The notes under the pieces are model-generated. The model was not told the DNA's origin and ran no database searches. It was given only the letters and a program-made list of their open reading frames with translations. This document shows, in pieces, positions 6,880 to 64,000 of a stretch of 64,000 nt of DNA (positions are counted from its first letter, which is position 1; every line of letters starts with the position of its first letter). The DNA is from Dendrobates tinctorius (Eukaryota): NCBI RefSeq assembly GCF_039654945.1, contig NW_027361819.1, positions 2,418,001 to 2,482,000 of the forward strand, given 5' to 3'. Position numbers and translations under genes: made by a program.

Positions 6880-6953
6880 GGTGGCGTCTCTGGGGGTCTC
6901 GTCTGTCACTCGCTGATTCTCAGGTTGTTTTTGTGTCTCTTCTTTGTCTGGAG

Positions 6954-7020: not shown

Positions 7021-7052
7021 GACTCAGTGTTTACATCTGATTACAGCATCGT

Positions 7053-9345: not shown

Positions 9346-10565
9346 GATGGAGGTGACCGGACACTGATGATGGAGGTGACCGGATACTAAATATGGAGGT
9401 GACCAGACACTGATGACAGAGGTGACCGGATACTGATGACGGAGGTGACCGGATACTGATGATGGAGGTGACTGGACACTGATGATGGAGGTGACCGGAC
9501 ACTGATGATGGAGGTGACCGGACACTGATGATAGAGGTGACCGGATACTGATGATGGAGGTGACCGGATACTGATGATGGAGGTGACCAGACTCTGATGA
9601 TGGAGGTGACCGGACACTGATGATGGAGGTGACCGGACACTGATGACGGAGGTGACCGGACACTGATGACGGAGGTGACCGGACACTGATGACGGAGGTG
9701 ACCGGACACTGATGATGGAGGTGACCGGATACTAAATATGGAGGTGACCAGACACTGATGACAGAGGTGACCGGATACTGATGACGGAGGTGACCGGATA
9801 CTGATGATGGAGGTGACCGGACACTGATGATGGAGGTGACCGGACACTGATGATGGAGGTGACCGGATACTGATGATAGAGGTGACCGGATACTGATGAT
9901 GGAGGTGACCGGATACTGATGATGGAGGTGACCAGACTCTGATGATGGAGGTGACCGGACACTGATGACGGAGGTGACCGGACACTGATGACGGAGGTGA
10001 CCGGATACTGAATATGGAGGTGACCGGATACTGAATATGGAGGTGACCGGATACTGATGATGGAGGTGACCAGACTCTGATGATGGAGGTGAGACACTGA
10101 TGACGGAGGAGACCGGACACTGATGACGGAGGTGACCGGACACTGATGACGGAGGAGACCGGACACTGATGACGGAGGAGACCGGACACTGATGACGGAG
10201 GTGACCGGACACTGATGACGGAGGTGACCGGATACTGATGACAGAGGTGACCGGATACTGATGACGGAGGTGACCAGACTCTGATGATGGAGGTGACCGG
10301 ACACTGATGATGGAGGTGACCGGACACTGATGACGGAGGAGACCGGACACTGATGACGGAGGTGACCGGACACTGATGACGGAGGAGACCGGACACTGAT
10401 GACGGAGGAGACCGGACACTGATGACGGAGGAGACCGGACACTGATGACGGAGGAGACCGGACACTGATGACGGAGGTGACCGGACACTGATGACGGAGG
10501 TGATCGGACACTGATGACGGAGACCAGATACTGATGACGGAGGAGACCGGACACCGATGACGGAG
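9346..10565. repeat. 23-bp minisatellite CTGATGA(C/T)GGAGGTGACCGGACA
   Basis: 23-bp period, ~53 copies; explains the 527/376/259-aa repetitive ORFs. Confidence 0.95.
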
Positions 10566-10779
10566 GCTGTGGGTCCTTCTCTTTGCTGTAGTGATCCATT
10601 AACCCTTCTATGGCTGAAGGCTCGCGCCGGTTCTTACTCTGCCCCTTCTTCCTGGCTGTCGCTTGCAGCCATAATCAGCGCGTCGCTCCGGCCCAATACG
10701 ACTTTTGTGTTGAGGGTCCGGAGTCGCCGTGTAGCCCCGGGCTAAGGGCCTGTTCACACCCGCCTGTCTCTGACGCCGC

Positions 10780-11260
10780 GGTTACGGATGTCGCAGGCCC
10801 TGATTGGTTCCGCCATCTTTCCGGTGGTCTGGGTGCAGCAGTCACAGAGACCTGTAATGTCTGAGGGAAAAATCCAGAAAAACAACTAAAATTATTAACA
10901 TTAACACTACTAACAACAGAAACCTTCCCGCATGCGCAGTTCACGGCTGCCGAAACCTGCCCTCCCGGCATGCCCCGCGAGCTCCCCGCGCGGTCTCCAT
11001 GGTTACAGTGTCGTCATCACTCCGCGCCGCCGTCCGGTCGCGCTGCCCTGCGCTTGTTCTCGGCGGCCAGGCCCGCTCTGCCCGGTAAGTGCCGCTGTTC
11101 TGTGTCGCGATATTATTGCCTCCTGCGCAGGCGTGTGTCGCGATATATAACGCTCCACCTCCCGGCCCTCAGCTAGTAATCCAGATGGCTGAGGCGTGTG
11201 AGGAGGACGCGGTGTGCAGCTTGGCTGCCTTGGCGCTGTATGTATCGCGATAGAGCACGG
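10780..11260 (+). promoter_or_regulatory. CpG-rich promoter and probable non-coding exon 1 of SGF29
   Basis: CpG-dense; ATTGG at ~10803, NRF1-like GCATGCGCA ~10930, RFX-like GTCTCCATGGTTAC ~10993-11006, donor CCG|GTAAGT at ~11085, TCGCGA elements at 11103, 11136 and 11243. Confidence 0.65.
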
Positions 11261-45300: not shown

Positions 45301-46338
45301 GTATATATACACCGCTCTCCTGCAGACACACTGTATATATACACCGCTCTCCTGCAGACACACACTGTATATATACACCGCTCTCCTGCAGACACACACT
45401 GTATATATACACCGCTCTCCTGCAGACACACACTGTATATATACACCGCTCTCCTGCAGACACACACTGTATATATACACCGCTCTCCTGCAGACACACA
45501 CTGTATATATACACCGCTCTCCTGCAGACACACACTGTATATATACACCGCTCTCCTGCAGACACACACTGTATATATACACCGCTCTCCTGCAGACACA
45601 CTGTATATATACACCGCTCTCCTGCAGACACACACTGTATATATACACCGCTCTCCTGCAGACACACACTGTATATATACACCGCTCTCCTGCAGACACA
45701 CACTGTATATATACACCGCTCTCCTGCAGACACACACTGTATATATACACCGCTCTCCTGCAGACACACACTGTATATATACACCGCTCTCCTGCAGACG
45801 CACACTGTATATATACACCGCTCTCCTGCAGACACACACTGTATATATACACCGCTCTCCTGCAGACACACACTGTATATATACACCGCTCTCCTGCAGA
45901 CACACACTGTATATATACACCGCTCTCCTGCAGACACACACTGTATATATACACCGCTCTCCTGCAGACACACACTGTATATATACACCGCTCTCCTGCA
46001 GACACACACTGTATATATACACCGCTCTCCTGCAGACACACACTGTATATATACACCGCTCTCCTGCAGACACACACTGTATATATACACCGCTCTCCTG
46101 CAGACACACACTGTATATATACACCGCTCTCCTGCAGACACACACTGTATATATACACCGCTCTCCTGCAGACACACACTGTATATATACACCGCTCTCC
46201 TGCAGACACACACAGTATATATACACCGCTCTCCTGCAGACACACACTGTATATATACACCGCTCTCCTGCAGACACACATACACACGGTGCGGTTCCTC
46301 TTCCCCATGACGTCACACACCGCACAGCCGCCTCTCAC

Positions 46339-46803: not shown

Positions 46804-47242
46804 ATGGCTGCAGACGGCGCGATCAGTGCAGAGACTCTGAAGGAGAAACTGACGCGGGAGCTGCAGGCGGAGCATGTGGTGAGGAGCGAGCGCGGGGTCA
46901 CATGACCAGGAGGACTACAAGGCTCACACAACCTTCCCAGTGTTTCCTGTCACGGTGCTGTGCTCCCCTTAATAACACTGATGTCACGTGTCTGGATTAT
47001 CAGACTGAGCTCTGGTTACAGCTGCGACCACTCATCTCCTTCCCCAGAGCAGAGACCGGCAGACGGGGAGGAGAGACTGCTGAGCATTGTAGTCCCCCAG
47101 GTGTATACTGCTGTGTAATTACTGATCATCTCTGTGTCCTCCAGGAAGTAGAAGACACCTCCCCAAACCACTGCTCCACCAGCTTCAGAGTGCTAGTGGT
47201 CTCCGCGCAGTTTGAAGGAAAAGCGCTGCTCCAGAGGCACAG
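46804..47242 (+). CDS. BOLA2: BolA family member 2, exons 1-2 (46804-46878, 47145-47242); last exon not found in the window
   Basis: MAADGAISAETLKEKLTRELQAEHV|EVEDTSPNHCSTSFRVLVVSAQFEGKALLQRHR matches BOLA2 (EVEDT..C..SFRVLVVS..FEGK.LLQRHR); GT-AG sites. Confidence 0.93.
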
Positions 47243-47267
47243 GTGAGAACCGGACACAAGCTGCGCT

Positions 47268-47822
47268 ATGCCCCAGAGCTGCACTCACTGTGTGCATACA
47301 TTACTGATCCTGAGTTACATCCTGTATTATACCCCAGAGCTGCACTCACTATTCTGCTGGTGCAGTCACTGTACACATACATTACTGATCCTGAGTTACA
47401 TCCTGTATTATACCCCAGAGCTGCGCTCACTATTCTGCTGGTGGAGTCACTGTGTACATACATTACATTACTGGTCCTGAGTTACATCCTGTATTATACC
47501 CCAGAGCTGCACTCACTATTCTGCTGGTGCAGTCACTGTGTACATACATTACTGATCCTGAGTTACATCCTGTATTATACCCCAGAGCTGCACTCACTAT
47601 TCTGCTGGTGCAGTCACTGTACACATACATTACTGATCCTGAGTTACATCCTGTATTATACCCCAGAGCTGCGCTCACTATTCTGCTGGTGGAGTCACTG
47701 TGTACATACATTACATTACTGGTCCTGAGTTACATCCTGTATTATACCCCAGAGCTGCACTCACTATTCTGCTGGTGCAGTCACTGTGTACATACATTAC
47801 TGATCCTGAGTTACATCCTGTA
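47268..47822. repeat. 81/86-bp satellite, left array (~7 units)
   Basis: CCAGAGCTGCACTCACTATTCTGCTGGTGCAGTCACTGTGTACATACAT(TACAT)TACTGATCCTGAGTTACATCCTGTATTATAC(C/T). Confidence 0.95.
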
Positions 47823-48243
47823 TCTCTTTTATTATAAAAAAATATCAAAAACACAATACATAAGACAGACAAAAACAACATTCCAGAAATCAAAAACCAC
47901 GATACATGAACTAAAATAAACCACACCGACATACAAAAAAAAACTTGTGCAAATATGCGAGCTTACGACAGTCCATCTCTGAAGGACATAGTGCAGTGTC
48001 TCCAGGCTTTGCAGCCTGAGGGACCCCCAGCAGGAACCTCCAAAAAAAAAAAAAAAAAAAAAAAGAAAACAAACAAAAATCCATTCCTTCACATTCAAAC
48101 CCATTCACACCTTCACTCATGCTCCCATTCATTCCTATATACTGGATTTAAAACAGGAAAGTAAACACTTTTTCTGGCCCACTGCCTTAAACAGAAAAAA
48201 CAGCCATCTTGGCAGACCCTCAACTACTTCCCCTCAACACAGC

Positions 48244-48419
48244 NNNNNNNNNNNNNNNNNNNNNNNNNNNNNNNNNNNNNNNNNNNNNNNNNNNNNNNNN
48301 NNNNNNNNNNNNNNNNNNNNNNNNNNNNNNNNNNNNNNNNNNNNNNNNNNNNNNNNNNNNNNNNNNNNNNNNNNNNNNNNNNNNNNNNNNNNNNNNNNNN
48401 NNNNNNNNNNNNNNNNNNN
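48244..48419. other. Assembly gap (176 N)
   Basis: Run of N. Confidence 1.
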
Positions 48420-49238
48420 CAGGTCCACAAGTTCGTAGCCTTTTCCACACCTAGGTCCATGAAAGTTTATGGCCTCAGAAAAAAAACAGCACCTCAGGGT
48501 CCAGGAAAGTTTATGGCCCGTATCTACATTTCCTTATATATTTCCCATGGTCCTTGGTGTAGTTCCCAGGCCATCTCCTTCTGATCTTCGGCCCTTGATT
48601 TCTCAGGGTCCATTCCAGGGTCCAAACTTCCCCCCTCCCTCCCGCAAGAAACCCCCACCCAACCTGACTGTACCCCTTCCCCCTTTCCTAACTATAATAT
48701 ATACATTTTTTTTAAAAGCACCATCCTAGCGACATACAATACTGCATACATGTACAGATACACAAAAAGCACATACTACACTTGTTATACACCTAAGATA
48801 CGACCTGCTATAACCAGTGATAATATTACCCAAACAATAAGTATTAACCACATTTCCAAAAACCTTGCCACAGGCCCAAGTTTGGTGCCTGCAAGCCCAA
48901 TATCCATTAAATTTCATGCTTCCAAAACAAAAAGCTAAAGTGACATGCACCAGCCCAACACCAGGAAAGGAGTTCTGGAGGCCCCATCCCTCACTAACAC
49001 ATTCACCCTGTCCCTCAACAACTAAGACTGTCCCTACTTCTGTCCCTAAAGAAACTGTCCCTATCTGTCCCTACCTGCCCCTACTCTACCTAACTTATCA
49101 TAACTAACTCTCTATCTGTCCCTCAGTGCCTGTCCCTCCCTGTCCCTATCTGCCCCTAATTCTGTCCCTAACACCCAGTGAAACTTATGCTATCCCTACC
49201 CTCATTCACACGGAGCTAGCTCTCCCTTGAGTGCGTTT

Positions 49239-52200
49239 CTAAAAGGAGAGGCCCCTCCAAAGCCAAGAGGCCTTCCTCACACCCAACCTTTCGAACTCCA
49301 AAGAACGGACCTTCACCAGGTCACCCAAGATGTTTCCTACCACCTCATCCCTCGGAAGGGTTTTTTTCCGCGTCGAAACTAGGCACCGTGCATTCCAAGT
49401 GTAGAACCTAACCACTACACTGACTAGGAATAAAGTGCACGGGTCCCGGCCACCCAGGGATCTGAACGCTCCATAGGCCCACTCAGCGTAGGAGAGGGAC
49501 GCCAGCCGCGGCCAACGTATGGAAGCACCCACCCTGTTGTAAACCTCTGCATTAAAGGGACAATGAAGCAGGAAGTGCTCCATGCTTTCCAGCACGTCGC
49601 CACACTCCTCACGGGGACAACCCCGATCATCGGATTTCCTGCACTTCAAGTTATCCTTTACATACAGCCTCCCGTGGAAGCAGCGCCAAGTCAAGTCCCA
49701 AAACTTCATGGGGATCCGCTTAGAATTTAAAAGCCCCAGCCCGACCTCCAGATCCCGGCCTGGGCAATCCTTAAGGGCCAGGGGCTTCTGGAAATGTGTC
49801 AACAGGACCCTCCTGTCAAGGCATTGCCTCGACATGGTCCTGATTTCCCACATTCCCAAACCCCACCGGCGGATCACCTTCAGAACCGGGGTAGCGTAAG
49901 CCGGGAGATGCCCATGAGGTGAGCGTAGGTCCTTCACCTGCCCTCCTGTCTCCCATTCCTGGAAGAAAGGCCAAAGCCAACCCTTGCAGGAGACTACCCA
50001 CGGAGGAGCCCTCTCTAGCCAGAGGTTGGAGATGTTAGTCTTAAGAAAGGTGTTTACTAGAAACACCACCGGGTTGACCATACCCAACCCACCTAGTCTC
50101 CTCGTACGGTATGTAACCTCCCTCTTGATTAGGTTAAGCCTATTCCCCCATAACAATTGGAAGAACAGGCTATAGACCCGTGTCCAGAGAGGTTCCGGCA
50201 AGATGCACACACTGCCCAGGTATATTAATAAAGGTAGCAGAAAGCCTTTAGCCAGGGCAACCCTTTCCCTCAGGGTTAAAGACCAACCCTTCCATTGGTC
50301 CACCTTTTGGGCGGCGATCTTAAGTCTGCCCTCCCAATTTTGCTGGGGGTAATCCCCGGGGCCAAATTCGATGCCTAGAATTTTGGCGGTGGCCTGGGGC
50401 CCTGGAAGGGTGTCCAGGAGATCAAACCTGGGATCTCCCCCTCCCAGCCAGAGACTTTCACACTTATCCCGGTTGATCATGGACCCGGATGCCTCCGAGT
50501 AGCGCACTACCTCCGACATGACCCAATCCGCCTCCCTTCTCGAGGACACGAAAAGGGAAACATCATCAGCATACGCCACCACCCTCAGAGAGGACCCAGA
50601 GCCCGCCTGGTCCATCCCGACTCCCGCCAACGGTCCACGATCTACCCTCCTTAGGAAGGGATCGATCGCGAACACGTATAAAAGCGGGCTCAGCGGACAG
50701 CCCTGACGGACCCCAGAACCCACCTCAAAAGGGCGACCCGACCAACCGTTCACCAGCGGAAAAGTCTCAGCCCCTTGGTACAAGATCTCTAACCATTTTA
50801 CAAACCTCCCAGGCAGACCATACCTCAAAAGGACGGACCAGAGGTACTCGTGGTTGACCCGGTCAAAGGCTTTCGCTTGATCTAATGACAGCAAGTACCC
50901 CCTCCAGTGACCTGCCCTACCCTGCTCCACTGCCTCTCGGACACCGAGCACAGCACTAAAAGTACTGCGGCCCGGAACAGAGCAATGCTGGGCCCCTGAA
51001 AGGAGCCGGGGTGCAAACTTCACCAGCCGATTAAACAGCACCTTGGCCAGAACCTTCCGGTCCGTATCGAGAAGCGCTATGGGACGCCAATTCTCGATAC
51101 GGGACGGATCCTTACCCTTTGACAGAATAATGAGGGCTGACTTCCTCATTGAGTCGGGAAGAGTGCCCGAGGAGAGACACTCATTAAATACCCCTGTCAA
51201 GAGGGGGACCAAGGAGTCCCTAAAAGTCTTATAGAACTCGGATGTTAAGCCATCCGGACCTGGCGATTTCTTGGGCCGAAGCCCATCAATGGCCAGTCTC
51301 ACTTCCTCTTCCCTGATTTCCTCTGCCAAAACACCAAGAGAGGGATCACCCCCTGGCTCAGGGACGGTTTCAGCCAGGAAAGCCGACATCCTGTCCCGAT
51401 CCAGATCCTTCTTTTCCAAGAGGTGTGAGTAGAAGGATCTGACCACCTCCAGGATCCCTGATTTGGATCTGTTCAGGGACCCCGTACTGTCGATCAGTCC
51501 TGTCACCATCTTACAATTCACTGACATCTTACAGTTTCTGTAAGGGTCGGGTGAGCGGTACTTCCCGAAGTCCCTCTCAAAAACTAAAGATGTGTGTCTA
51601 TCATACTGACACCTCTTGAGCAAAGATTTCACTCTGGAGATTTCCTCACGGTCACCTCCAGTCGAGACAAGCTGCTCGAGTTTCCTCCCCAGGGCCTGGT
51701 ACAAGCGGTGCCTGTTCAGACTCCTGAGGCTCGAGAGCTGACGGAAGAACCCCGCCACCCGCTTTTTGAAGATCTCCCACCACTCTGACTTACTACTACA
51801 GAGATCCAACAGCGGTACCTGGCTCTGAAGAAAGTCCTCGAAGGATTGTCTCACCTCCGCTTCTTCCAGCAGGGACGAATTGAGCTTCCACAGCCCTCTT
51901 CCCATCCGATGAGTCTCTGCAACATTCAGAGAAAAGAAAATTAGACAGTGATCGGAGAACTCCACCTCAACGGCGGACACAGCAGAAAAGATGGCGTCCT
52001 CCTTCAAAAAAAACCTGTCTATTCTAGACCTACAGCTACCCCTATGGTAGGTGAAACCTCCGTGACCTGGGGTGTGCCGGATGTGGACATCCACCAGGCG
52101 AGCTTCGCTGGCTATGCTATTCAACGCGACGCTATCATAAGCCAGGCGATCTCCGGGACCCCCCCGGTCACGGGACCTCGTAATGGTGTTGAAGTCCCCA

Positions 52201-52631
52201 CCGAAGACCACCTGCCGGCTCGTAAAAAGAAAGGGCTTGATCCTCAGGAAGAGACATTTGCGGTCCCACTTGGACTGCGGGCCGTAGATGTTGATGAGCC
52301 GGAGCTCTTGTCCCCTCATGAAGACATCTAGGATCAGGCACCTCCCCATTTCCAACTCAGTAACCCGTCGGCATTCAACAGCTGCAGTCTTAAAAAGGAC
52401 TGCCACCCCGCTATACGGCTCGGCCGCAAGAGACCAGTATGAGGGCCCGCACCTCCACTCCCTCCGTGCTTTATAGATGGCCCCCATGTCTGTTAGTCTG
52501 GTCTCTTGCAAGAATAAAATTTCTGCCTCAATCCGGGAGAAAAAATCAAAGGCCGTGAAGCGAGCCGCATCTGACTTTATGCTGGCAACATTAATAGATG
52601 CCAGCGTCAACGGGGCGAGTTCCGCCATCAT
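49239..52631 (-). CDS. LINE ORF2: APE endonuclease + reverse transcriptase + C-terminal zinc finger, 1130 aa, intact
   Basis: SINV, FLQET, NIYGP, GGDFN, SRIDRF, FSDH; KSPGPDG, NWRPIAL, LDQAKAFD, GVRQGCPLSP, AYADD; CPREEC..ESMEHFLLHC. Confidence 0.95.
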   Translation of the reverse strand: MMAELAPLTLASINVASIKSDAARFTAFDFFSRIEAEILFLQETRLTDMGAIYKARREWRCGPSYWSLAAEPYSGVAVLFKTAAVECRRVTELEMGRCLILDVFMRGQELRLINIYGPQSKWDRKCLFLRIKPFLFTSRQVVFGGDFNTITRSRDRGGPGDRLAYDSVALNSIASEARLVDVHIRHTPGHGGFTYHRGSCRSRIDRFFLKEDAIFSAVSAVEVEFSDHCLIFFSLNVAETHRMGRGLWKLNSSLLEEAEVRQSFEDFLQSQVPLLDLCSSKSEWWEIFKKRVAGFFRQLSSLRSLNRHRLYQALGRKLEQLVSTGGDREEISRVKSLLKRCQYDRHTSLVFERDFGKYRSPDPYRNCKMSVNCKMVTGLIDSTGSLNRSKSGILEVVRSFYSHLLEKKDLDRDRMSAFLAETVPEPGGDPSLGVLAEEIREEEVRLAIDGLRPKKSPGPDGLTSEFYKTFRDSLVPLLTGVFNECLSSGTLPDSMRKSALIILSKGKDPSRIENWRPIALLDTDRKVLAKVLFNRLVKFAPRLLSGAQHCSVPGRSTFSAVLGVREAVEQGRAGHWRGYLLSLDQAKAFDRVNHEYLWSVLLRYGLPGRFVKWLEILYQGAETFPLVNGWSGRPFEVGSGVRQGCPLSPLLYVFAIDPFLRRVDRGPLAGVGMDQAGSGSSLRVVAYADDVSLFVSSRREADWVMSEVVRYSEASGSMINRDKCESLWLGGGDPRFDLLDTLPGPQATAKILGIEFGPGDYPQQNWEGRLKIAAQKVDQWKGWSLTLRERVALAKGFLLPLLIYLGSVCILPEPLWTRVYSLFFQLLWGNRLNLIKREVTYRTRRLGGLGMVNPVVFLVNTFLKTNISNLWLERAPPWVVSCKGWLWPFFQEWETGGQVKDLRSPHGHLPAYATPVLKVIRRWGLGMWEIRTMSRQCLDRRVLLTHFQKPLALKDCPGRDLEVGLGLLNSKRIPMKFWDLTWRCFHGRLYVKDNLKCRKSDDRGCPREECGDVLESMEHFLLHCPFNAEVYNRVGASIRWPRLASLSYAEWAYGAFRSLGGRDPCTLFLVSVVVRFYTWNARCLVSTRKKTLPRDEVVGNILGDLVKVRSLEFERLGVRKASWLWRGLSF

Positions 52632-55600
52632 GGGTGATCAAGTTGGATGGCCAACTTCTTACCACTGCTATCACCTCCACCTGGGGAGGGGTCGGACACC
52701 TTCCTTTTCAGGGAAGCTCCCGTTGTGTCCATCCCACCCCCCCCGGTGTCCTCGCCCCTGGGTTCCAGGTCTGTCCCCCCCCCAGGAGGAACACTGCCCC
52801 CTGAGGGACGGACCCCACCATCCCCCGAAGGACCCTCCGGTGGTACCCCCGGCCCAGCATCCTCGTCTTGCGGCCCATCATCCGAGCCTCCGAGGACGCT
52901 GAACCGGTTGGAGAGATCAATCAGAGGGGGGTCAGCGGGCCCTTCCGTGCGCACCCTGGTGGTCGGGGGCGGGGGAGATTTTGAAGGCTTGCCAGCCTTC
53001 TTCCCCCCCGATTTGTTACGATTGGCATGTTTACTTTTGCCACCCGCTGCTGTAGGCTGCTCCTGGACCTCCTCATCAACACTTTCATACTGTGAGGACC
53101 CGTCCGAGTCAGCCGCTTTATCCTCCCTCTCCATCCTCCTGATCTCCTCTCTCACCACACTCTCCCTCAGGACCTCAGAGGCTTTTGCCACGGGCCTGGA
53201 GGGAGGAGCAGGCATCGACCCGGTTGCCCGAGACTTCACCTGCCCCCCACCCCCATGGCGTTTTTCTTGCCTCCGCACGTACGCGGGGCCCCTCACCTTG
53301 GCATTGCCCTTCCTCACCGGTCCCTCAGCCCCTTCCCCTCTGCCACCACCTGCCACAGCTGCAGGAGCGCCGCCAGAGGTTTCTCCCTCACGGACTCCTC
53401 CCGCCGGGCCTGCAGCGGCATTAGAAAAGGAGCGAGGGCAGCGGCTGAGAGGGTGACCTAGGTCACCACACAAGTGACACCGAATGTCTTTACACGAGGC
53501 GGCCAGATGACCTACCCCACCACACAAGGCACATTTCTGTACCTTGCAGCTAGCGCTGAAGTGAGTGGGGTCGCCGCACTTGTGGCAGACCTTCGGTTGC
53601 CCCTGGTAGAAGACCAGGATCCTGTCCCTTCCCAGGAACGCCGAGGAAGGGATGTGGGTGACCGTGCCGCCGGAAACCTTCAGTTTAACCATGAAGGTCC
53701 AGCCCCCCGACCAGATGCCGAATTCGTCCCTGTTCTTTTTGGGGACCTCGGTGACTTCCCCGTAACGGGAAAGCCACGTCATAATGTCCACGCCGGCAAG
53801 TGACTCGTTACAAGTGACCACAGTCACTCACTTGACGGAATTTTGGCGAGACACCGCTTGCGCAACGAAGTCTCGCCATCCGGGCTCTTCCCGCACCAGC
53901 TCATAGTTAGACCAGAAGAGCTCAAGCCCCTCTGGCCGCACAAAGCTGACGTCGAAGAAGCGGGACGCCGAAGGATGTATCAGGGCAAAGATGTCATTCG
54001 CCCCGAAGCCCATCTTAAGGAGGAGCTCCACCACCTTGCTCCTAGGTGGACAAGCTTCACTGCCCCCCCACCTAAGACGGACCACATTCCTCCTTTGCGG
54101 CCCCTGCCCGGCTGTGGGGAGAGACCAAACAGTCCCTCCCTCCCTTTGGTTTTGGAAGGCAGCAAGGCCATGTCTCTCTATCCAGAAAGACAAGTCCACT
54201 GTCCTCCCCTCTACCACTATCGACCTTTCTCCTTTTTTGAGGGCCTCCAGGAAACGGTGGTGCAAAGCGCCGTCCCTGGAGCCCGGAGGCGAGGAGACCC
54301 CCCCCAGGACCACCCCGACCCCCAGCCGCGGCCCCTGCATAACTATGTTGGGGTCTTGCGGCCAGGGGGGCAGACGGGCCAGCCCGTGCACTTTTCTTCA
54401 CCCCCGCCGCCGGCTTGCCAGGGAGCGCCAGAGTCCCCGCACCCTCAGATGAAGGTAGGTGGGCCGGGGACCCCGACAACTCCCCGCCAGCTTTTGGGGG
54501 CAGCACAGCATTACTTGGAAGGGTGGGTGGGACAGAGGGCAGCGGGCCCGCAGCGGCCACGCCCCCCCCGCCGGTCGCAGCCACCCCAGGCAGAGCCGCG
54601 GCCCCCTGCGAGGCCACGGCCCCCCCGGGTGACGCGAGCACAGCGGGCGGAGTCGCGACCGCTGAGGCCACGCCCCCCCCGCCAGTCACAGCCACCACGG
54701 GCAGAGCGGCGACCCCTTGCGAGGCCATGCCCCCCCGGGCGACGCAGACGCAGCGGGTGGGATGACGGCCGAGGAGGACATCCCCCCCCCCCCCCCCCCC
54801 GCACGCCACAGCCTTTGCAGGCCGGGCAACACTCGGGGAGGCCACGCCCCCCTCACGGACCACCGCTGCCACCCCATGCCCACCACTTGAGACAGGCAAG
54901 GCCGGCCACTCCCCCTCGTCGCCCAGCGGCGGCGGAGCCCCCTGCACGGACCCCTTTTTGGGTCGACGTGCCGGAGACCCCGCTCTCACCACAGGCGCCG
55001 ACATGGGAGCGACCAGCACTTTGCACCGCCTCAGCTGCTGCTTGATGTTCTGTTCGCCCTTCCTAGGCTTCTGGACCCCCACTAGCGATCCAGACTTAGC
55101 GGATCCGTACGTGGGGGGTCCAGAAGCCCCAGCACTCGCCGCCGGAGGTGCGGCCCTGGCTGTACCAACTTTACCTGGTGCCAGGCCAGCCTCCCCTGCC
55201 ACCAAGGGCTGAGCCTGGACACCACCACCAACACCACAACCAGCACCGACCTCCATGTCGCTGCCCTGGTCTGAACTGTCACCAGATGCGACAGTCAGGT
55301 CACAACAGTCATCTCTCTCCCCGCTCCCTCGCTGCGGACCCACCACAGGGCCCGAGCCGGGGTGGGTAGCGGGTTCCACACAGCGGGACAGAGGGGCCCC
55401 GGGAAGAGGAGCAAAAACCAGTTGTTCCTCCACGCCTTCAGAGGCCTTACGCCTGCGCCTCCTGTTTCTCCTCTTCCCGGTTGCCTCATCCTCCTGGCAG
55501 ACCTCATACCCAAACAACAGCGTGCCAAACCGTGCTGGGGATTCAGTCTGCCGTACTTGTTTAAGGATGAGGCAGCCCCCCTCAGAACTACTCCCGCTCC

Positions 55601-56252
55601 CTCCATCCTCCCCCTCGCTCCCGCTTTCCTCCGCGTTACTGGAGTCCAGCGGGAGGGCCACCTGCTCGGGGGCTATCCCGCTGCCTGTTACCTGGCTCAC
55701 GCTGGTGTCCGCCAGGTCTTCAGGTGGAGGTGGCCCGGATGTGGTGTGGGCGCCATCTTGCTCTTCCTCCTCCTCGCTTTCCTCCACCTGGACGGGGACT
55801 CCTGACCCCCCAGGAGACCCACCGGCCATGGCCCTGAACCGGTCCTCGTTCTGCAGCTTCTCCTGGAAGGGGCCGCTGCCGGCCATGATGGTACTTCGCC
55901 GGTCCTCCAGGGCCCGAATCTCCCCTTTCAGCCGCTTGACCGTGGCGGTGACCTCCGCTCTCTTTGAGGCAGGGAGCCTGTTTTTACTGGTGACCCGGGC
56001 TCCCTCCAACTCCCCCCGGAGTCTCCTGAGCTGCTTGCCGGCCTCCTCGTACTCGGAGAGGTGGGCATGAATGCGGGAGGCGTAGGTGGTAGCTGGCTCT
56101 CCCGCAACCTTGGAGCCCCAGATGTTAAGGGGGGGCCCCGCCTCACCTCTGCCGGCTGCTGCACCTCCGGGGGAAGGGCCCGCCACAGCCTTCACTTCGG
56201 GGGTCCCGGACCCTGGAGCCTTGCGGCCCCCTGGGGTCCGCTTTTTCCCCAT
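52628..56252 (-). pseudogene. LINE ORF1 (~1207 aa reconstructed; coiled coil, low-complexity region, RRM-like region, 3x CCHC; ZCCHC3-like), disrupted
   Basis: Three track ORFs join if one base is removed from the G8 run at 54298-54305 and the in-frame TGA at 53830-53828 is ignored; CHKCGDPTHFSASC, CALCGGVGHLAASC, CHLCGDLGHPLSRC. Confidence 0.8.
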
Positions 56253-56500
56253 CCCTGGGACTGGCTGGCTGTGCCTTGGGCCTCCTGGTGGTGGATGAGG
56301 CCCCCCACCCCCAGCTGGCTTGCCGGAGGGTGGGAGCCAGGTGCACAGCCCCGGCGCTCAGTCCCAGGTAGAGTCCTCTTTCCTGGGAAGGGGGCAGATG
56401 GAAAGTCCTTGCAGGAAAAAAAAAACCTCCCTTCCCAGGAGCTTAGCAAAAGCCTAGCCTGCAGAGCTCAGCCCAGACGCTCCTCCTCTTCCTGGGCATG

Positions 56501-58214
56501 CCCAGAGCTGCACTCACTATTCTGCTGGCGCAGTCACTGTGTACATACATTACATTACTGATCCTGAGTTACATCCTGTATTATACCCCAGAGCTGCACT
56601 CACTATTCTGCTGGTGCAGTCACTGTGTACATACCTTACATTACTGATCCTGAGTTACATCCTGTATTATACTCCAGAGCTGCACTCACTATTCTGCTGG
56701 TGCAGTCACTGTGTACATACATTACATTACTGATCCTGAGTTACATCCTGTATTATACTCCAGAGCTGCACTCACTATTCTGCTGGTGCAGTCACTATGT
56801 GCATACATTACATTACTGATCCTGAGTTACATCCTGTATTATACTCCAGAGCTGCACTCACTATTCTGCTGGTGCAGTCACTGTGTACATACATTACATT
56901 ACTGATCCTGAGTTACTTCCTGTATTATACCCCAGAGCTGCACTCACTATTCTGCTGGTGCAGTCACTGTGTACATACATTACATTACTGATCCTGAGTT
57001 ACATCCTGTATTATACTCCAGAGCTGCACTCACTATTCTGCTGGTGCAGTCACTGTGTACATACATTACATTACTGATCCTGAGTTACATCCTGTATTAT
57101 ACCCCAGAGCTGCACTCACTATTCTGCTGGTGCAGTCACTGTGTACATACATTACATTACTGATCCTGAGTTACATCCTGTATTATACTCCAGAGCTGCA
57201 CTCACTATTCTGCTGGTGCAGTCACTGTGTACATACATTACATTACTGATCCTGAGTTACATCCTGTATTATACCCCAGAGCTGCACTCACTATTCTGCT
57301 GGTGCAGTCACTGTGTACATACATTACATTACTGATCCTGAGTTACATCCTGTATTATACCCCAGAGCTGCACTCACTATTCTGCTGGTGCAGTCACTGT
57401 GTACATACATTACATTACTGATCCTGAGTTACATCCTGTATTATACTCCAGAGCTGCACTCACTATTCTGCTGGTGCAGTCACTGTGTACATACATTACA
57501 TTACTGATCCTGAGTTACATCCTGTATTATACCCCAGAGCTGCACTCACTATTCTGCTGGTGCAGTCACTGTGTACATACATTACATTACTGATCCTGAG
57601 TTACATCCTGTATTATACTCCAGAGCTGCACTCACTATTCTGCTGGTGCAGTCACTGTGTACATACATTACATTACTGATCCTGAGTTACATCCTGTATT
57701 ATACTCCAGAGCTGCACTCACTATTCTGCTGGTGCAGTCACTGTGTACATACATTACATTACTGATCCTGAGTTACATCCTGTATTATACTCCAGAGCTG
57801 CACTCACTATTCTGCTGGTGCAGTCACTGTGTACATACATTACATTACTGATCCTGAGTTACATCCTGTATTATACCCCAGAGCTGCACTCACTATTCTG
57901 CTGGTGCAGTCACTGTGTACATACATTACATTACTGATCCTGAGTTACATCCTGTATTATACTCCAGAGCTGCACTCACTATTCTGCTGGTGCAGTCACT
58001 GTGTACATACATTACATTACTGATCCTGAGTTACATCCTGTATTATACTCCAGAGCTGCACTCACTATTCTGCTGGTGCAGTCACTGTGTACATACATTA
58101 CATTACTGATCCTGAGTTACATCCTGTATTATACTCCAGAGCTGTACTCACTATTCTGCTGGTGCAGTCACTGTGTACATACATTACATTACTGATCCTG
58201 AGTTACATCCTGTA
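56501..58214. repeat. 86-bp satellite, right array (~20 near-identical units)
   Basis: 86-bp period, also seen as the 64-aa ORFs recurring every 86 nt. Confidence 0.97.
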
Positions 58215-61200
58215 GCTCTTTTTTATTATAAAAGTATCAAAACACAATACATAACAGACTACATAATACAAAACACAATACATAGCAGACAAACAATGCT
58301 CCCGACATAAATATTTGTGCAAACCTCGCAATTTTACCTGATCCCCCAGGCTTTCCAGCCTAGAGGGCCCCAGCAGGATCCCTCCACCCCTATACAACTT
58401 GAAATAAAGAAACCCCTATGTAACACATTCATCCCCTACGCACACCCTTTCACACTCCATTCGCGCTTTGCACCCATACCTATATACAAGTAATAAAGAA
58501 AAAAAACCATATTCCGGCCCTTCTGCCTTAAAAAAAACCATAGCCACTTATACTGGCAAAACCCCAGCACCAGCCTAACACCTCTACGAAAAATTTATTT
58601 ATTTTTTTTTAAATTTTAATAATTTTTTCCTTTTTTGTTTTTATTTATCATCCCCCCACCACACCCAAGGTCCAAAAGTCCATGGCCCATTACACGAAAC
58701 ACACAAGGTCCATCAATGTTCATGGCCTATCACATCTATCTCTTGGCAAAAAAAGTTTATGCTCCAAGAGGAAAACCCTCACCCGGCTCCACCCAAAACC
58801 TATGCTATTTACCACGTGGTCCATTCTTCTTTTCCTTTCCACGATTTGTCCATCCACTTTCCCTTCAGATAAAGGTCCTCTTTTCCCATTCTCACCCCCC
58901 ATTCACCCCCCTCCCAACCTCACTACACCCTCCCATGCACTCCTAACTAAAACAAAAGAAAGTATGTATAATACACAAAAATACAAATATACAATATATA
59001 TCTACATATACACCACATAACATTATTACCATATTTGTTTTGGCTTGCCACCACACACTTTTCTTTGCAGACCCAAGATCAGTGCCTGCAAGCCCAATAT
59101 CCATTAATGCTCTATGTTTCCAAAACAAAAGTCTAGAGTGGCATGCTTTAGCCCACCACCAGGAAAAGGAGTTCTCGAGGCCCCGTCCCTCACTAACTCA
59201 TTCACCCTGTCCCTCAACAACTAAGACTGTCCCTGCTTCTGTCCCTAAAGAAACTGTCCCTATCTGTCCCTTCCTGTCCCTACTCCACCTAACTTAATAT
59301 AACTAACTTTCTATCTGTCCCTCAGTGCCTGTCCCTCCCTGTCCCTATCTGCCCCTACTTCTGTCCCTAGCACACCCAGTGAAACTTATGCTATCCCTAC
59401 CCTCATTCACACGGAGCTAGCTCTCCCTTGAGTGCGTTTTTAAAAGGAGAGGCCTCTCCAAAGCCAAGAGGCCTTCCTCACACCCAACCTTTCGAACTCC
59501 AAAGAACGGACCTTCACCAGGTCACCCAAGATGTTTCCTACCACCTCATCCCTTGGGAGGGTTTTTTTCCGCGTCGAAACTAGGCACCGTGCATTCCAAG
59601 TGTAGAACCTAACCACTACACTGACTAGAAATAAAGTGCACGGGTCCCGGCCACCCAGGGATCTGAATGCTCCATAAACCCACTCAGCGTAGGAGAGGGA
59701 CGCCAGCCGCGGCCAACGTATGGAAGCACCCACCCTGTTGTACACCTCTGCATTAAAGGGACACTGAAGCAGGAAGTGCTCCATGCTTTCCAGCACGTCG
59801 CCACACTCCTCACGGGGACAACCCCGATCATCGGATTTCCTGCACTTCAGGTTATCCTTTACATACAGCCTCCCGTGGAAGCAACGCCAGGTCAAGTCCC
59901 AAAACTTCATGGGGATCCGCTTAGAATTTAAAAGCCCCAGCCCGACCTCCAGATCCCGGCCTGGGCAATCCTTAAGGGCCAGGGGCTTCTGGAAATGGGT
60001 CAACAGGACCCTCCTGTCAAGGCATTGCCTCGACATGGTCCTGATTTCCCACATTCCCAGACCCCACCGGCGGATCACCTTCAGAACCGGGGTAGCGTAA
60101 GCCGGGAGATGCCCATGAGGTGTGCGTAGGTCCTTCACCTGCCCTCCTGTCTCCCATTCCTGGAAGAAAGGCCAAAGCCAACCCTTGCAGGAGATTACCC
60201 ACGGAGGAGCCCTCTCTAGCCAGAGGTTGGAGAGGTTAGTCTTAAGAAAGGTGTTTACTAGAAACACCACCGGGTTTACCATACCCAACCCGCCTAGTCT
60301 CCTCGTACGGTATGTAACCTCCCTCTTGATTAGGTTAAGCCTATTCCCCCATAACAATTGGAGAAACAGGCTATAGACCCGTGTCCAGAGAGGTTCCGGC
60401 AAGATGCACACACTGCCCAGGTATATTAATAAAGGGAGCAGAAAGCCTTTAGCCAGGGCAACCCTTTCCCTCAGGGTTAAAGACCAACCCTTCCATTGGT
60501 CCACCTTTTGGGCAGCGATCTTAAGTCTGCCCTCCCAATTTTGCTGGGGGTAATCCCCGGGGCCAAATTCGATGCCTAGAATTTTGGCGGTGGCCTGGGG
60601 CCCTGGAAGGGTGTCCGGGAGATCAAACCTGGGATCTCCCCCTCCCAGCCAGAGACTTTCACACTTATCCCGGTTGATCATGGACCCGGATGCCTCCGAG
60701 TAGCGCACTACCTCCGACATGACCCAATCCGCCTCCCTTCTCGAGGACACGAAAAGGGAAACATCATCGGCATACGCCACCACCCTCAGAGAGGACCCAG
60801 AGCCCGCCTGGTCCATCCCGACTCCCGCCAACGGTCCACGATCTACCCTCCTTAGGAAGGGATCGATCGCGAACACGTATAAAAGCGGGCTCAGCGGACA
60901 GCCCTGACGGACCCCAGAACCCACCTCAAAAGGGCGACCTGACCAACCGTTCACCAGCGGAAAAGTCTCAGCCCCTTGGTACAAGATCTCTAACCATTTT
61001 ACAAACCTCCCAGGCAGACCATACCTCAAAAGGACGGACCAGAGGTACTCGTGGTTGACCCGGTCAAAGGCTTTCGCTTGATCTAATGACAGCAAGTACC
61101 CCCTCCAGTGACCTGCCCTACCCTGCTCCACTGCCTCTCGGACACCGAGCACAGCACTAAAAGTACTGCGGCCCGGAACAGAGCAATGCTGGGCCCCTGA

Positions 61201-64000
61201 AAGGAGCCGGGGTGCAAACTTCACCAGCCGATTAAACAGCACCTTGGCCAGAACCTTCCGGTCCGTATCGAGAAGCGCTATGGGACGCCAATTCTCGATA
61301 CGGGACGGATCCTTACCCTTTGACAGAATAATGAGGGCTGACTTCCTCATTGAGTCGGGAAGAGTGCCCGAGGAGAGACACTCATTAAATACCCCTGTCA
61401 AGAGGGGGACCAAGGAGTCCCTAAAAGTCTTATAGAACTCGGATGTTAAGCCATCCGGACCTGGCGATTTCTTGGGCCGAAGCCCATCAATAGCCAGTCT
61501 CACTTCCTCTTCCCTGATTTCCTCTGCCAAAACACCAAGAGAGGGATCACCCCCTGGCTCAGGGACGGTTTCAGCCAGGAAAGCCGACATCCTGTCCCGA
61601 TCCAGATCCTTCTTTTCCAAGAGGTGTGAGTAGAAGGATCTGACCACCTCCAGGATCCCTGATTTGGATCTGTTCAGGGACCCCGTACTGTCGATCAGTC
61701 CTGTCACCATCTTACAATTCACTGACATCTTACAGTTTCTGTAAGGGTCGGGTGAGCGGTATTTCCCGAAGTCCCTCTCAAAAACTAAAGATGTGTGTCT
61801 ATCATACTGACACCTCTTGAGCAAAGATTTCACTCTGGAGATTTCCTCACGGTCACCTCCAGTCGAGACAAGCTGCTCGAGTTTCCTCCCCAGGGCCTGG
61901 TACAAGCGGTGCCTGTTCAGACTCCTGAGGCTCGAGAGCTGACGGAAGAACCCCGCCACCCGCTTTTTGAAGATCTCCCACCACTCTGACTTACTACTAC
62001 AGAGATCCAACAGCGGTTCCTGGCTCTGAAGAAAGTCCTCGAAGGATTGTCTCACCTCCGCTTCTTCCAGCAGGGACGAATTGAGCTTCCACAGCCCTCT
62101 TCCCATCCGATGAGTCTCTGCAACATTCAGAGAAAAGAAAATTAGACAGTGATCGGAGAACTCCACCTCAACGGCGGACACAGCAGAAAAGATGGCGTCC
62201 TCCTTCAAAAAAAAACCTGTCTATTCTAGACCTACAGCTACCCCTATGGTAGGTGAAACCTCCGTGACCTGGGGTGTGCCGGATGTGGACATCCACCAGG
62301 CGAGCTTCGCTGGCTATGCTATTCAAAGCGACGCTATCATAAGCCAGGCGATCTCCGGGACCCCCCCGGTCACGGGACCTCGTAATGGTGTTGAAGTCCC
62401 CACCGAAGACCACCTGCCGGCTCGTAAAAAGAAAGGGCTTGATCCTCAGGAAGAGACATTTGCGGTCCCACTTGGACTGCGGGCCGTAGATGTTGATGAG
62501 CCGGAGCTCTTGTCCCCTCATGAAGACATCTAGGATCAGGCACCTCCCCATTTCCAACTCAGTAACCCGTCGGCATTCAACAGCTGCAGTCTTAAAAAGG
62601 ACTGCCACCCCGCTATACGGCTCGGCCGCAAGAGACCAGTATGAGGGCCCGCACCTCCACTCCCTCCGTGCTTTATAGATGGCCCCCATGTCTGTTAGTC
62701 TGGTCTCTTGCAAGAATAAAATTTCTGCCTCAATCCGGGAGAAAAAATCAAAGGCCGTGAAACGAGCCGCATCTGACTTTATGCTGGCAACATTAATAGA
62801 TGCCAGCGTCAACGGGGCGAGTTCCGCCATCATGGGTGATCAAGTTGGATGGCCAACTTCTTACCACTGCTATCACCTCCACCTGGGGAGGGGTCGGACA
62901 CCTTCCTTTTCAGGGAAGCTCCCGTTGTGTCCATCCCACCCCCCCCCGGTGTCCTCGCCCCCGGGTTCCAGGTCTGTCCCCCCCCCCCAGGAGGAACACT
63001 GCCCCCTGAGGGACGGACCCCACCATCCCCCGAAGGACCCTCCGGTGGTACCCCCGGCCCAGCATCCTCGTCTTGCGGCCCATCATCCGAGCCTCCGAGG
63101 ACGCTGAACCGGTTGGAGAGATCAATCAGAGGGGGGTCAGCGGGCCCTTCCGTGCGCACCCTGGTGGTCGGGGGCGGGGGAGATTTTGAAGGCTTGCCAG
63201 CCTTCTTCCCCCCCCGATTTGTTACGATTGGCACGTTTACTTTTGCCACCCGCTGCTGTAGGCTGCTCCTGGACCTCCTCATCAACACTTTCATACTGTG
63301 AGGACCCGTCCGAGTCAGCCGCTTTATCCTCCCTCTCCATCCTCCTGATCTCCTCTCTCACCACACTCTCCCTCAGGACCTCAGAGGCTTTTGCCACGGG
63401 CCTGGAGGGAGGAGCAGGCATCGACCCGGTTGCCCGAGACTTCACCTGCCCCCCACCCCCATGGCGATTTCTTGCCTCCGCACGTACGCGGGGCCCCTCA
63501 CCTTGGCATTGCCCTTCCTCACCGGTCCCTCAGCCCCTTCCCCTCCGCCACCACCTGCCACAGCTGCAGGAGCGCCGCCAGAGGTTTCTCCCTCACGGAC
63601 TCCTCCCGCCGGGCCTGCAGCGGCATTAGAAAAGGAGCGAGGGCAGCGGCTGAGAGGGTGACCTAGGTCACCACACAAGTGACACCGAATGTCCTTACAC
63701 GAGGCGGCCAGATGACCTACCCCACCACACAAGGCACATTTCTGTACCTTGCAGCTAGCGCTGAAGTGAGTGGGGTCGCCGCACTTGTGGCAGACCTTCG
63801 GTTGCCCCTGGTAGAAGACCAGGATCCTGTCCCTTCCCAGGAACGCCGAGGAAGGGATGTGGGTGACCGTGCCGCCGGAAACCTTCAGTTTAACCATGAA
63901 GGTCCAGCCCCCCGACCAGATGCCGAATTCGTCCCTGTTCTTTTTGGGGACCTCGGTGACTTCCCCGTAACGGGAAAGCCACGTCATAATGTCCACGCCG
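58215..64000 (-). mobile_element. Tx1-clade LINE, copy 2 (5' part runs off the window)
   Basis: ORF region nearly identical to copy 1; ORF2 62833-59440 broken by A9 versus A8 near 62207-62215; ORF1 C-terminal part has small indels; 3' end AATAAAAAAGAGC abuts the satellite. Confidence 0.92.

What the first reader, a model, noticed from the sequence alone, without database searches (positions are those of the whole stretch)
47268..64000. Candidate satellite-targeting Tx1 retrotransposon: two copies end at the same base of an 86-bp satellite
Seen: both LINE 3' ends join the satellite right after GAGTTACATCCTGTA (47822/47823 and 58214/58215), in the same orientation, giving satellite-LINE-satellite-LINE inside BOLA2 intron 2. 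The distal 3' UTRs differ strongly right up to the junction (TCTCTTTTATTATAAAAAAATATC vs GCTCTTTTTTATTATAAAAGTATC), which argues against simple tandem duplication of one insertion. Known: Tx1-clade APE elements are often sequence-specific (Xenopus Tx1L/Tx2L into Tx1D/Tx2D, Keno into U2, Mutsu into 5S, Dewa into tRNA repeats, Kibi/Koshi into microsatellites). Inference: this family uses an intronic 86-bp satellite as its target; I do not recognise this target from described families. Only two junctions are visible.
Basis: partly seen in the sequence, partly recalled or inferred. Interest (0 to 1): 0.85.

Follow-up and report, generated by a model that had tools for sequence, protein, structure and literature searches.

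The report
Frog LINE that targets one satellite
Two copies of a young L1/Tx1-type jumping gene in a frog BolA-gene intron each end at the same base of an 81/86-base tandem repeat, and sequencing contigs plus a second frog family show the same joint. It is therefore most likely a repeat-targeting retrotransposon, which is a known kind, with a target not found in the literature searched.

Summary
Two minus-strand LINE copies (47823-56500, and 58215 to beyond 64000) each join the 81/86-bp satellite directly after GAGTTACATCCTGTA, in the same orientation. Their bodies are 98.5% alike. The last ~1 kb of the 3' UTRs is only 40-70% alike, so this is not a simple tandem duplication.

The assembly gap (48244-48419) lies in the non-coding tail of copy 1. 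Its flanks are colinear with copy 2.

Independent support:
- Contigs of two studies of the same species carry the copy-2 joint without a difference, at the same depth as the inner tail.
- Further tail variants share the joint, also in another species.
- In Anomaloglossus (Aromobatidae) a relative with 81% ORF2 identity ends before TACAGGAT of the same satellite.
- The closest relative found, in Ranitomeya, sits in register inside a different, 40-bp satellite.

Best reading (0.75): target-specific retrotransposition, with the nick at CCTGTA^TTATAC. Satellite targets are already listed for the Tx1 clade (PMC4494074), so this is a new member of a known kind.

Tx1-clade membership and the genome-wide share of satellite-flanked copies were not tested.

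The scan noted this LINE-satellite pair before on other pieces of this genome, and a follow-up described a 36-bp-minisatellite-targeting relative.

The parts
47145..47242 (+). BolA-family exon (host gene context). The satellite starts about 25-40 nt into the following intron.
   Evidence: Pfam BolA, E 3.7e-7. AG and GT splice signals read.
47280..47822 (.). Satellite array L: 6.6 units of 81/86 bp forming a 248-bp higher-order repeat. This is the 3' flank of LINE copy 1.
   Evidence: TRF; unit table.
47823..49238 (-). 3' UTR of LINE copy 1 (tail type 1). It ends ...ATAATAAAAGAGA at 47823 and contains the assembly gap 48244-48419.
49239..52631 (-). ORF2 of copy 1, uninterrupted, 1130 aa: AP-type endonuclease, reverse transcriptase, zf-RVT.
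   Evidence: Best solved relative is LINE-1 ORF2p, E 2.5e-69.
52628..54391 (-). ORF1 region of copy 1: ZCCHC3-type RNA-binding domains 1 and 2 plus a CCHC knuckle, in one frame but interrupted by an in-frame TGA at 53828-53830.
54072..56252 (-). 5' ORF of 726 aa, low complexity with no Pfam family, in a different frame from the RBD region. Contains GC-rich 57/111-bp tandem repeats at 54548-54791.
56253..56500 (-). 5' UTR and 5' end of copy 1. The joint to the satellite lies at 56495-56500/56501 inside a 14-nt palindrome, CTGGGCATGCCCAG. There is no target-site duplication, and 2-6 nt of the satellite unit are missing.
   Evidence: The 5' end is colinear with the Ranitomeya relative.
56501..58214 (.). 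Satellite array R: 20 units of 86 bp. It is the 5' flank of copy 1 and the 3' flank of copy 2.
58215..59439 (-). 3' UTR of LINE copy 2 (tail type 2). It ends ...ATAATAAAAAAGAGC at 58215.
   Evidence: Contigs of runs X1 and X19 cover 58200-58506 and 58193-58591 with no base differences (X19: 1 gap).
59440..64000 (-). Body of LINE copy 2. ORF2 is split by one extra base in a homopolymer run near 62200-62208, and part of ORF1 follows. The 5' part lies beyond the window.
   Evidence: About half of the depth in X1, and nearly all in X19, lacks the extra base (table 4).

Best explanation
**What it is.** A young L1/Tx1-type non-LTR retrotransposon family that integrates by target-primed reverse transcription at one fixed position of the 81/86-bp satellite.

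**Proposed steps.**
1. The element's AP-type endonuclease, or its ribonucleoprotein, nicks the satellite strand that reads ...GAGTTACATCCTGTA^TTATAC (window + strand).
2. The freed 3' end primes reverse transcription at the very end of the element RNA (...ATAATAAAAGAG plus one variable base). The DNA joint therefore has no poly(A).
3. Second-strand joining happens a few bases away (...GCAGCTCTGGG | element 5' end), losing 2-6 nt and making no target-site duplication.

**Why the start site may be so exact.** The element keeps AATAAA only 5-8 nt before its end. Transcripts should therefore be cut inside the first downstream satellite unit. Pairing of this read-through piece with the nicked target may set the exact start.

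**The two copies here.** They are separate insertions by two sublineages that share a nearly identical body but carry different 3' UTR tails.

**Shown:** the anatomy, the repeated joint, and its presence in other runs and in another frog family.
**Inferred:** which strand is nicked first, the role of the endonuclease, and the read-through pairing.
For: **1. Same base, same orientation at two joints that are not duplicates.**
- Joints at 47822/47823 and 58214/58215.
- Bodies 98.5% alike; tails 38-69% alike per 100 columns, right up to a more conserved ~45-nt end.

**2. Copy 1 is full length and has satellite on both sides.** The unit is almost continuous across it...CCTGTA | LINE | CCCAGAGC..., with 2-6 nt missing.

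**3. Public-run contigs.**
- The copy-2 joint contig in X1 (58200-58506, 0 differences) has depth 256. The inner-tail contig has depth 250, and diverged single LINE contigs have depth 4-8. This suggests tens of copies of this tail, essentially all joined to the satellite at this base.
- The same joint is in X19, from another study, at depth 77.
- Total depth just inside the tail (58219) is 1297 in X1 and 1233 in X19. Several other tail variants therefore share the joint.
- One such variant is seen directly: a loose end at 58222 in X19.
- In another species (X9) the depth there is 11599, with contigs that differ in T-run length.

**4. Cross-family locus L011, Anomaloglossus baeobatrachus (Aromobatidae).** A LINE with 80.6% ORF2 identity ends ...TTTTATAATAAAAGATG and is followed by TACAGGAT... 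of a 97-bp variant of the same satellite, in the same relative orientation, at an unrelated locus.

**5. The lineage inserts precisely into satellites.**
- Its closest relative found (L009, Ranitomeya variabilis; grouped with the window copy at 98/95 support) lies in register between two arrays of a 40-bp satellite.
- A 50%-identical Pelobates relative forms two head-to-tail copies sandwiching a 13-nt duplication.

**6. The family looks recently active.** ORF2 of copy 1 is intact, and much or most of the contig depth lacks copy 2's frameshift (about half in X1, nearly all in X19).

**7. Established knowledge.** Many Tx1-clade elements are target-specific, with satellites among the listed targets (PMC4494074).
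Against: - No genome-wide table of flanks could be made. Contigs drop rare variants, so copies with other flanks may exist unseen.
- The depth argument lacks a measured single-copy depth.
- Tens of identical joints could partly reflect amplification of LINE-bearing satellite blocks rather than separate insertions.
- In L011 no satellite is seen upstream of the LINE. A DNA-transposon end abuts its ORF1, so that copy shows a 3' joint only.
- The copy-1 joint and the stretch across the assembly gap were not checked with reads.
- Endonuclease identity to the window copy is the same for the relative with the same target (84.5%) and for the relative with a different target (83.8%). Nothing yet ties specificity to the endonuclease.
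Confidence: 0.75

Rival explanations
1. The satellite belongs to the mobile unit. The LINE carries satellite units behind its tail, either as its own 3' repeats or by 3' transduction from read-through transcripts. The fixed joint would then be internal to what moves, and the arrays would be seeded by the LINE rather than targeted by it.
For: - AATAAA lies 5-8 nt before the joint, so transcripts must run into the flank.
- In L011 the LINE has 4.5 satellite units downstream and none upstream.
- In the window each LINE is followed by an array.
Against: - Copy 1 has satellite on its 5' side too, in register to within 2-6 nt. I estimate the chance of this under random phase at 8-15%.
- The sister element in Ranitomeya has its satellite on both sides with the unit continuous across it.
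- Cleavage after AATAAA would fall inside the first unit, not 4-20 units later.
- Uninterrupted satellite is about 10^3 times deeper than the joint.
Confidence: 0.12
2. One old insertion was duplicated locally, by unequal crossing-over within the satellite, as a satellite-plus-LINE block. The bodies were later homogenised by gene conversion, while the tails kept their old divergence.
For: - Layout is satellite-LINE-satellite-LINE in direct orientation, 10.4 kb apart.
- There is a sharp identity boundary near 49000/59190, as a conversion tract would give.
Against: - The near-identical body and the type-2 tail are each multi-copy genome-wide. The body is about twice as deep as that tail in X19, so body-tail mosaics are a family trait, not a local conversion.
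- At least a third tail variant shares the joint.
- The flanking arrays differ in structure: an 81+86+81 higher-order repeat against plain 86-bp units.
- The same joint exists in another frog family at another locus.
Confidence: 0.08
3. Assembly artefact. Repeats were mis-joined or scaffolded across the gap, so that the layout, and copy 1's joint in particular, is not real.
For: - An assembly gap (48244-48419) lies inside copy 1's tail.
- The region consists of satellite and high-copy LINE.
Against: - The copy-2 joint is reproduced with no base differences in contigs of two independent studies.
- The gap flanks are colinear with copy 2.
- The same joint is seen in a separate assembly of another species.
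Confidence: 0.03

Closest known systems
Tx1L of Xenopus laevis, which inserts into the Tx1D DNA transposon (as cited in PMC4494074; Christensen et al. 2000, not readable here)
   Same: A frog LINE of the L1/Tx1 group with an AP-type endonuclease, inserted at one defined site of another repeated sequence in a fixed orientation.
   Different: The target here is a short 81/86-bp tandem satellite, not a transposon. Here there is a small target loss instead of a duplication. Relatedness to Tx1L itself was not tested.
Kibi and Koshi, and crocodilian Tx1 families specific for (TC)n, (TTC)n and (TTCC)n microsatellites; Tx1 families marked 'Sat' in Fig. 3 of PMC4494074
   Same: Tx1-clade elements whose targets are tandem repeats. 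Tandem or repeated insertions occur within arrays.
   Different: The unit here is 81-86 bp with a single fixed position per unit, so phase can be scored. Which satellites the published 'Sat' families use could not be read, because the figure is not held.
R1 and R2 in 28S rDNA; Keno in U2 and Mutsu in 5S genes (from memory; PMC4494074 cites Kojima and Fujiwara 2004 for Keno, Kibi and Koshi only)
   Same: Precise joints without poly(A). Dependence on, or use of, flanking target sequence in the transcript has been proposed for R1 and R2. Multicopy targets act as safe havens.
   Different: Those targets are functional RNA genes. R2 uses a restriction-like endonuclease.
Sister elements found here: the Ranitomeya variabilis copy in a 40-bp satellite (L009) and the 36-bp-minisatellite-targeting LINE reported by this scan (s1-389112)
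   Same: Same ORF layout and the same terminal motif TTTTATAATAAAAGAG (L009). Precise, in-register insertion into a short satellite.
   Different: The satellite targeted is different, although L009 is the nearest relative in the RT/C-terminal tree.

Membership tests
L1 superfamily (L1/Tx1 group) of non-LTR retrotransposons | ORF2 with an N-terminal AP-type endonuclease, a reverse transcriptase and a C-terminal zinc-binding region | tested here: met
   Pfam Exo_endo_phos 12-228, RVT_1 512-755, zf-RVT 970-1030. Best solved relative is LINE-1 ORF2p, E 2.5e-69 over residues 7-865.
L1 superfamily (L1/Tx1 group) of non-LTR retrotransposons | ORF1 with RNA-binding domains and CCHC knuckle(s) upstream of ORF2 | tested here: met
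   RBD_ZCCHC3_1st, RBD_ZCCHC3_2nd and zf-CCHC. In copy 1 this ORF is interrupted by an in-frame TGA.
Tx1 clade | RT phylogeny places the element with named Tx1 references (Tx1L, Keno, Kibi, Koshi) rather than with the L1 M/F lineages | not testable with these tools
   No named Tx1 sequence could be obtained. Relatives carry only generic names. The tree holds unnamed frog relatives only.
Target-specific non-LTR retrotransposon | The same sequence flanks more than 20% of copies (criterion of PMC4494074, Methods) | tested here: inconclusive
   All readable 3' joints of this family (2 in the window, 1 in L011) are to the satellite. The joint contig is as deep as the inner tail contig (256 against 250). 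No copy-by-copy census was possible.
Target-specific non-LTR retrotransposon | Insertions at the same nucleotide and in the same orientation in independent events | tested here: met
   Joints at 47822/47823 and 58214/58215 carry tails that differ by more than 30%. There is a third tail variant and another species in contigs, and L011 in Aromobatidae.
Target-specific non-LTR retrotransposon | Target sequence on both sides, continuous across the element | tested here: met
   Copy 1...CCTGTA | LINE | CCCAGAGC..., with 2-6 nt lost. Not visible for copy 2 (off the window) and not met in L011.
Target-specific non-LTR retrotransposon | The element's endonuclease cleaves the target site specifically | not testable with these tools
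   Needs biochemistry.

The most novel reading that the evidence does not exclude
**Reading.** Target choice in this frog LINE lineage is set mainly by the stretch of flanking target that the transcript carries, not by the endonuclease. AATAAA sits at the extreme end, so the RNA ends inside the neighbouring repeat. This read-through piece then guides priming at matching repeats. A copy that lands by chance in a new tandem repeat could so found a lineage that homes to that repeat.

**What it would explain.**
- Elements about 84% identical in the endonuclease sit in quite different satellites: 86 bp here and in Anomaloglossus, 40 bp in Ranitomeya. The 40-bp-targeting copy is nested among the 86-bp-targeting ones.
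- This genome seems to hold many such LINE-satellite pairs (unchecked scan notes).
Probability: 0.2. Interest if true: 0.75.

Novelty: new member of a known kind. Interest (0 to 1): 0.5.

Why it matters
Site-specific LINEs with AP-type endonucleases are few. How they choose a site is known in detail only for a handful, such as R1, TRAS/SART and Tx1L.

This case offers a young family with an intact ORF2 and a long, easily scored target unit. It also has very close relatives that use a different satellite. That combination gives a natural swap experiment for locating the determinant of specificity: the endonuclease, the C-terminal region or the read-through RNA.

It also bears on how short satellites inside frog genes gather large insertions. 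Here about 19 kb or more sits in one BolA-gene intron, which adds to gene and genome size in poison frogs.

As a kind of element it is not new.

Tried and rejected
- **Metagenome pattern scan.** The joint pattern gave 4 hits in JGI metagenome contigs. All were chance matches with unrelated flanks.
- **Protein search with an ORF crossing joint 1.** No candidates. Short frog ORFs are not in that collection.
- **Contigs of the closest ORF2 relatives (L001-L003).** They stop about 350 nt after the stop codon, before the tail. The Bufo and Hyperolius gene models were too long to fetch.
- **Rfam on the satellite and tail.** Nothing.
- **Folding the last 150 nt of both tails.** No better than shuffles, z = 0.42 and -0.33.
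- **Satellite words in papers.** None found. No frog satellite paper matched.
- **Source names of relatives.** Only generic ones. The Atlas gave only generic LINE clusters. The Tx1 label therefore stays untested.
- **Christensen et al. 2000.** Not held.
- **Bacterial promoter/terminator scan of the 5' end.** Not applicable to a frog.
- **L010 (Hyla sarda).** A decayed relative without a recognisable tail or satellite.
- **The other end of the DNA transposon that abuts the L011 LINE.** Not in the locus, so its 5' flank stays unknown.
- **Complex prediction and structure prediction.** Not used. No binding claim is made.
Full report
**1. What is there**

The window's right third holds, on the + strand in this order:
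- a BolA-family exon at 47145-47242 (Pfam BolA, E 3.7e-7);
- a short satellite array at 47280-47822;
- a LINE on the minus strand at 47823-56500;
- a second array of the same satellite at 56501-58214;
- a second minus-strand LINE from 58215 that runs off the window.

The left array has 6.6 units arranged as an 81+86+81 higher-order repeat. The right array has 20 plain 86-bp units. No other copy of the LINE or the satellite lies in the window.

**2. The observation**

GAGTTACATCCTGTA ends at 47822 and at 58214, and LINE tail follows at once. At copy 1 the first tail base could equally be the next satellite base, so the joint is defined to within 1 nt. The orientation is the same.

**3. The assembly gap**

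The gap (48244-48419) lies inside copy 1's 3' UTR.
- Its left flank aligns to copy 2 at 58402-58581.
- Its right flank aligns to copy 2 at 58668-58904.
- Both align on the same strand and in the same order, with scores well above shuffles and above the opposite strand.
- The two sides are therefore colinear parts of one non-coding tail.
- In copy 2 the matching interval is 86 nt of A/T-rich sequence.

**4. The element**

Copy 1 is about 8.7 kb long. From 5' to 3' on the minus strand it has:
- a 248-nt leader;
- a 726-aa low-complexity ORF without a Pfam match;
- an ORF1 region with two ZCCHC3-type RNA-binding domains and a CCHC knuckle, interrupted by an in-frame TGA at 53828-53830;
- an intact 1130-aa ORF2 with AP-type endonuclease, reverse transcriptase and zf-RVT domains;
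- a 1.4-kb 3' UTR.

The best solved relative is human LINE-1 ORF2p (E 2.5e-69). Copy 2's ORF2 is split by one extra base in a homopolymer. About half of the contig depth in X1, and nearly all in X19, lacks this base (table 4).

This places the element in the L1 superfamily. The Tx1-clade label could not be tested, because no named Tx1 reference was obtainable.

**5. Not a simple duplication**

The copies are 98.5% identical over 4934 bp. Identity drops within about 200 bp, near 49000/59190, to 38-69% per 100 columns for the remaining ~1 kb. Short conserved blocks remain, and the last ~45 nt are about 85% alike.

Contig depths indicate that this mosaic is a family trait:
- In run X19 the near-identical body contigs have depth 133-164, while the type-2 tail has depth 77.
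- In X1 the summed body depth is 3000-11000, against 400-640 for this tail.
- Contigs of relatives in other species break about 350 nt after the stop codon, roughly where the tails begin to diverge. This could reflect a branch point in the assembly graph.

**6. The joint is multi-copy and shared by several tails**

- In X1 a contig covers 58200-58506 without a difference at depth 256. The inner-tail contig (58643-58924) has depth 250.
- Diverged single LINE contigs in the same run have depth 4-8. The type-2 tail is therefore present in tens of copies, and essentially all assembled ones run into the satellite at this base.
- The contig stops 15 nt into the satellite. This is expected if other tails sharing the first ~15 nt converge on the same joint.
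- X19, from another study, has the same joint (58193-58591, no base differences, 1 gap).
- Depth just inside the tail (58219) is 1297 in X1 and 1233 in X19, several times that of the type-2 contig.
- A loose end at 58222 shows a third tail variant directly.
- In organism C (X9) depth there is 11599, and two contigs differ only in T-run length.
- No well-supported loose end lies just before 58215. However, contigs drop rare variants and most rows were not shown, so this is weak evidence.

**7. Other species**

*L011, Anomaloglossus baeobatrachus (Aromobatidae).*
- It holds a LINE with 80.6% ORF2 identity.
- Its tail ends ...TTTTATAATAAAAGATG and is followed by TACAGGAT... and 4.5 units of a 97-bp variant of the same satellite (89-92% identical), in the same relative orientation, at an unrelated locus.
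- The 97-bp unit has two TACAGGAT motifs, so which one was used is ambiguous.
- Upstream, a DNA-transposon end abuts the LINE's ORF1 and no satellite is seen. This copy therefore gives a 3' joint only.

*L009, Ranitomeya variabilis (Dendrobatidae).*
- It holds a LINE with 78-85% ORF2 identity and the same terminal motif.
- It is flanked on both sides by a different, 40-bp satellite.
- The unit is continuous across the element...CACTAGGAG(C) | LINE | T(T)CACTACATACAG.

*Tree.* In a tree of the RT and C-terminal part, the window copy pairs with L009 (98/95). L011 is the next branch out (81/79).

*Endonuclease identity.* Identity to the window copy is 83.8% for L009 and 84.5% for L011.

*L008, Pelobates.* A 50%-identical relative forms two head-to-tail copies sandwiching a 13-nt duplication next to a 42-bp repeat.

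**8. Mechanism**

Shown:
- a fixed joint;
- no poly(A);
- satellite on both sides of copy 1 with 2-6 nt lost;
- a 14-nt palindrome (CTGGGCATGCCCAG) across the 5' joint;
- AATAAA 5-8 nt before the end in all tails;
- one variable last base (A, C, T or TG).

Inferred:
- The first nick is on the strand reading CCTGTA^TTATAC, whose 3' end primes the cDNA.
- Second-strand joining is at ...GCAGCTCTGGG.
- Transcripts end within the first downstream unit. This read-through piece may pair with the target and fix the start point. A similar role has been proposed for R1; this is from memory and was not checked here.

If the joints are independent, three further joints at the same one of 172 position-orientation states have a chance of about 2e-7. 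This is my own arithmetic.

**9. Rivals**

- *Satellite carried by the element (0.12).* It fits L011 and the terminal AATAAA. It does not fit the in-register 5' flank of copy 1, the two-sided flanks of L009, or arrays of 4-20 units.
- *Local duplication plus gene conversion (0.08).* It fits the layout and the sharp identity boundary. It does not fit the genome-wide mosaics, the third tail, the different array structures or the Aromobatidae joint.
- *Assembly artefact (0.03).* It is countered by independent contigs and by another assembly.

**10. Known or new**

Many Tx1-clade families are target-specific, and Fig. 3 of PMC4494074 lists satellites among known Tx1 targets. The paper's criterion is that the same sequence flanks more than 20% of copies.

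This scan has unchecked first-stage notes of the same LINE-satellite pair on other pieces of this genome (s1-376915, s1-362343, s1-364474, s1-386064). It also has a follow-up on a relative that targets a 36-bp minisatellite (s1-389112).

I found no paper containing the satellite's sequence. Repbase and Dfam could not be queried.

Verdict: a new member of a known kind. The more interesting side is the apparent change of target between very close relatives.

Noticed in passing
window 40000-46280; L009 1-6416: A 34-bp satellite (185 copies) lies upstream of the BolA-family exon. A 34-bp satellite with a shared CGCTCTCCTG core also lies upstream of the Ranitomeya LINE locus.
   Followed up: no
window 47990-48015 and 58345-58365 (minus strand): Inside the otherwise diverged tails, both copies keep a small hairpin: stem AGGCU/AGCCU with a GNRA loop (GCAA in copy 1, GGAA in copy 2). 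It may be a conserved 3' UTR signal.
   Followed up: partly
window 56487-56505: The 5' joint of copy 1 lies in a perfect 14-nt palindrome, CTGGGCATGCCCAG. It reads as an inverted copy of the satellite end (CCCAG) with a CATG spacer. This could be a trace of how the second strand was joined.
   Followed up: partly
window 47262-47290; L011 15885-15905: In the LINE's direction, the far end of the downstream array stops at ...CAGCT followed by TGTG, both here and in Anomaloglossus. That is close to the phase of the LINE 5' joint. The left edge here also carries a TATGCCCC variant that resembles the GCATGCCC at copy 1's 5' joint. Unexplained.
   Followed up: partly
window 62199-62208: Copy 2's ORF2 is split by one extra base in a homopolymer run. 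About half of the contig depth in X1, and nearly all in X19, lacks it, so the defect is not shared by the whole family.
   Followed up: yes
window 54548-54791: GC-rich 57/111-bp tandem repeats lie inside the 726-aa 5' ORF of the LINE. That ORF has no Pfam family. Its first ~366 residues are recognisably conserved (42%) only in the Ranitomeya relative; its last ~80 residues also match L009, L011 and L001.
   Followed up: partly
L008 3958-21249 (Pelobates cultripes): Two head-to-tail copies of a 50%-identical LINE are separated only by the 13-nt TACTGTCTCCCCT. The same 13 nt also flank the pair, next to a 42-bp tandem repeat with the same motif.
   Followed up: partly
L009 15357-19469 (Ranitomeya variabilis): About 4 kb of nested repeats (including telomere-like TTAGGG runs and a 391-bp tandem repeat), bounded by TTAACCCC...GGGGTTAA ends, is inserted right after the LINE's ORF2 stop codon.
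   Followed up: no
L011 1-9562 (Anomaloglossus): 184-bp and 118-bp tandem repeats (the latter in both orientations) and a DNA-transposon end ...CTCGCTCATCACTAG abut the LINE's ORF1 start.
   Followed up: partly
window 47823, 58215; L009 20493; L011 15463-15464: The tail ends AAAAGAG plus one variable base: A, C or T (TG after AAAAGA in L011). This may reflect imprecise or untemplated initiation of reverse transcription.
   Followed up: no
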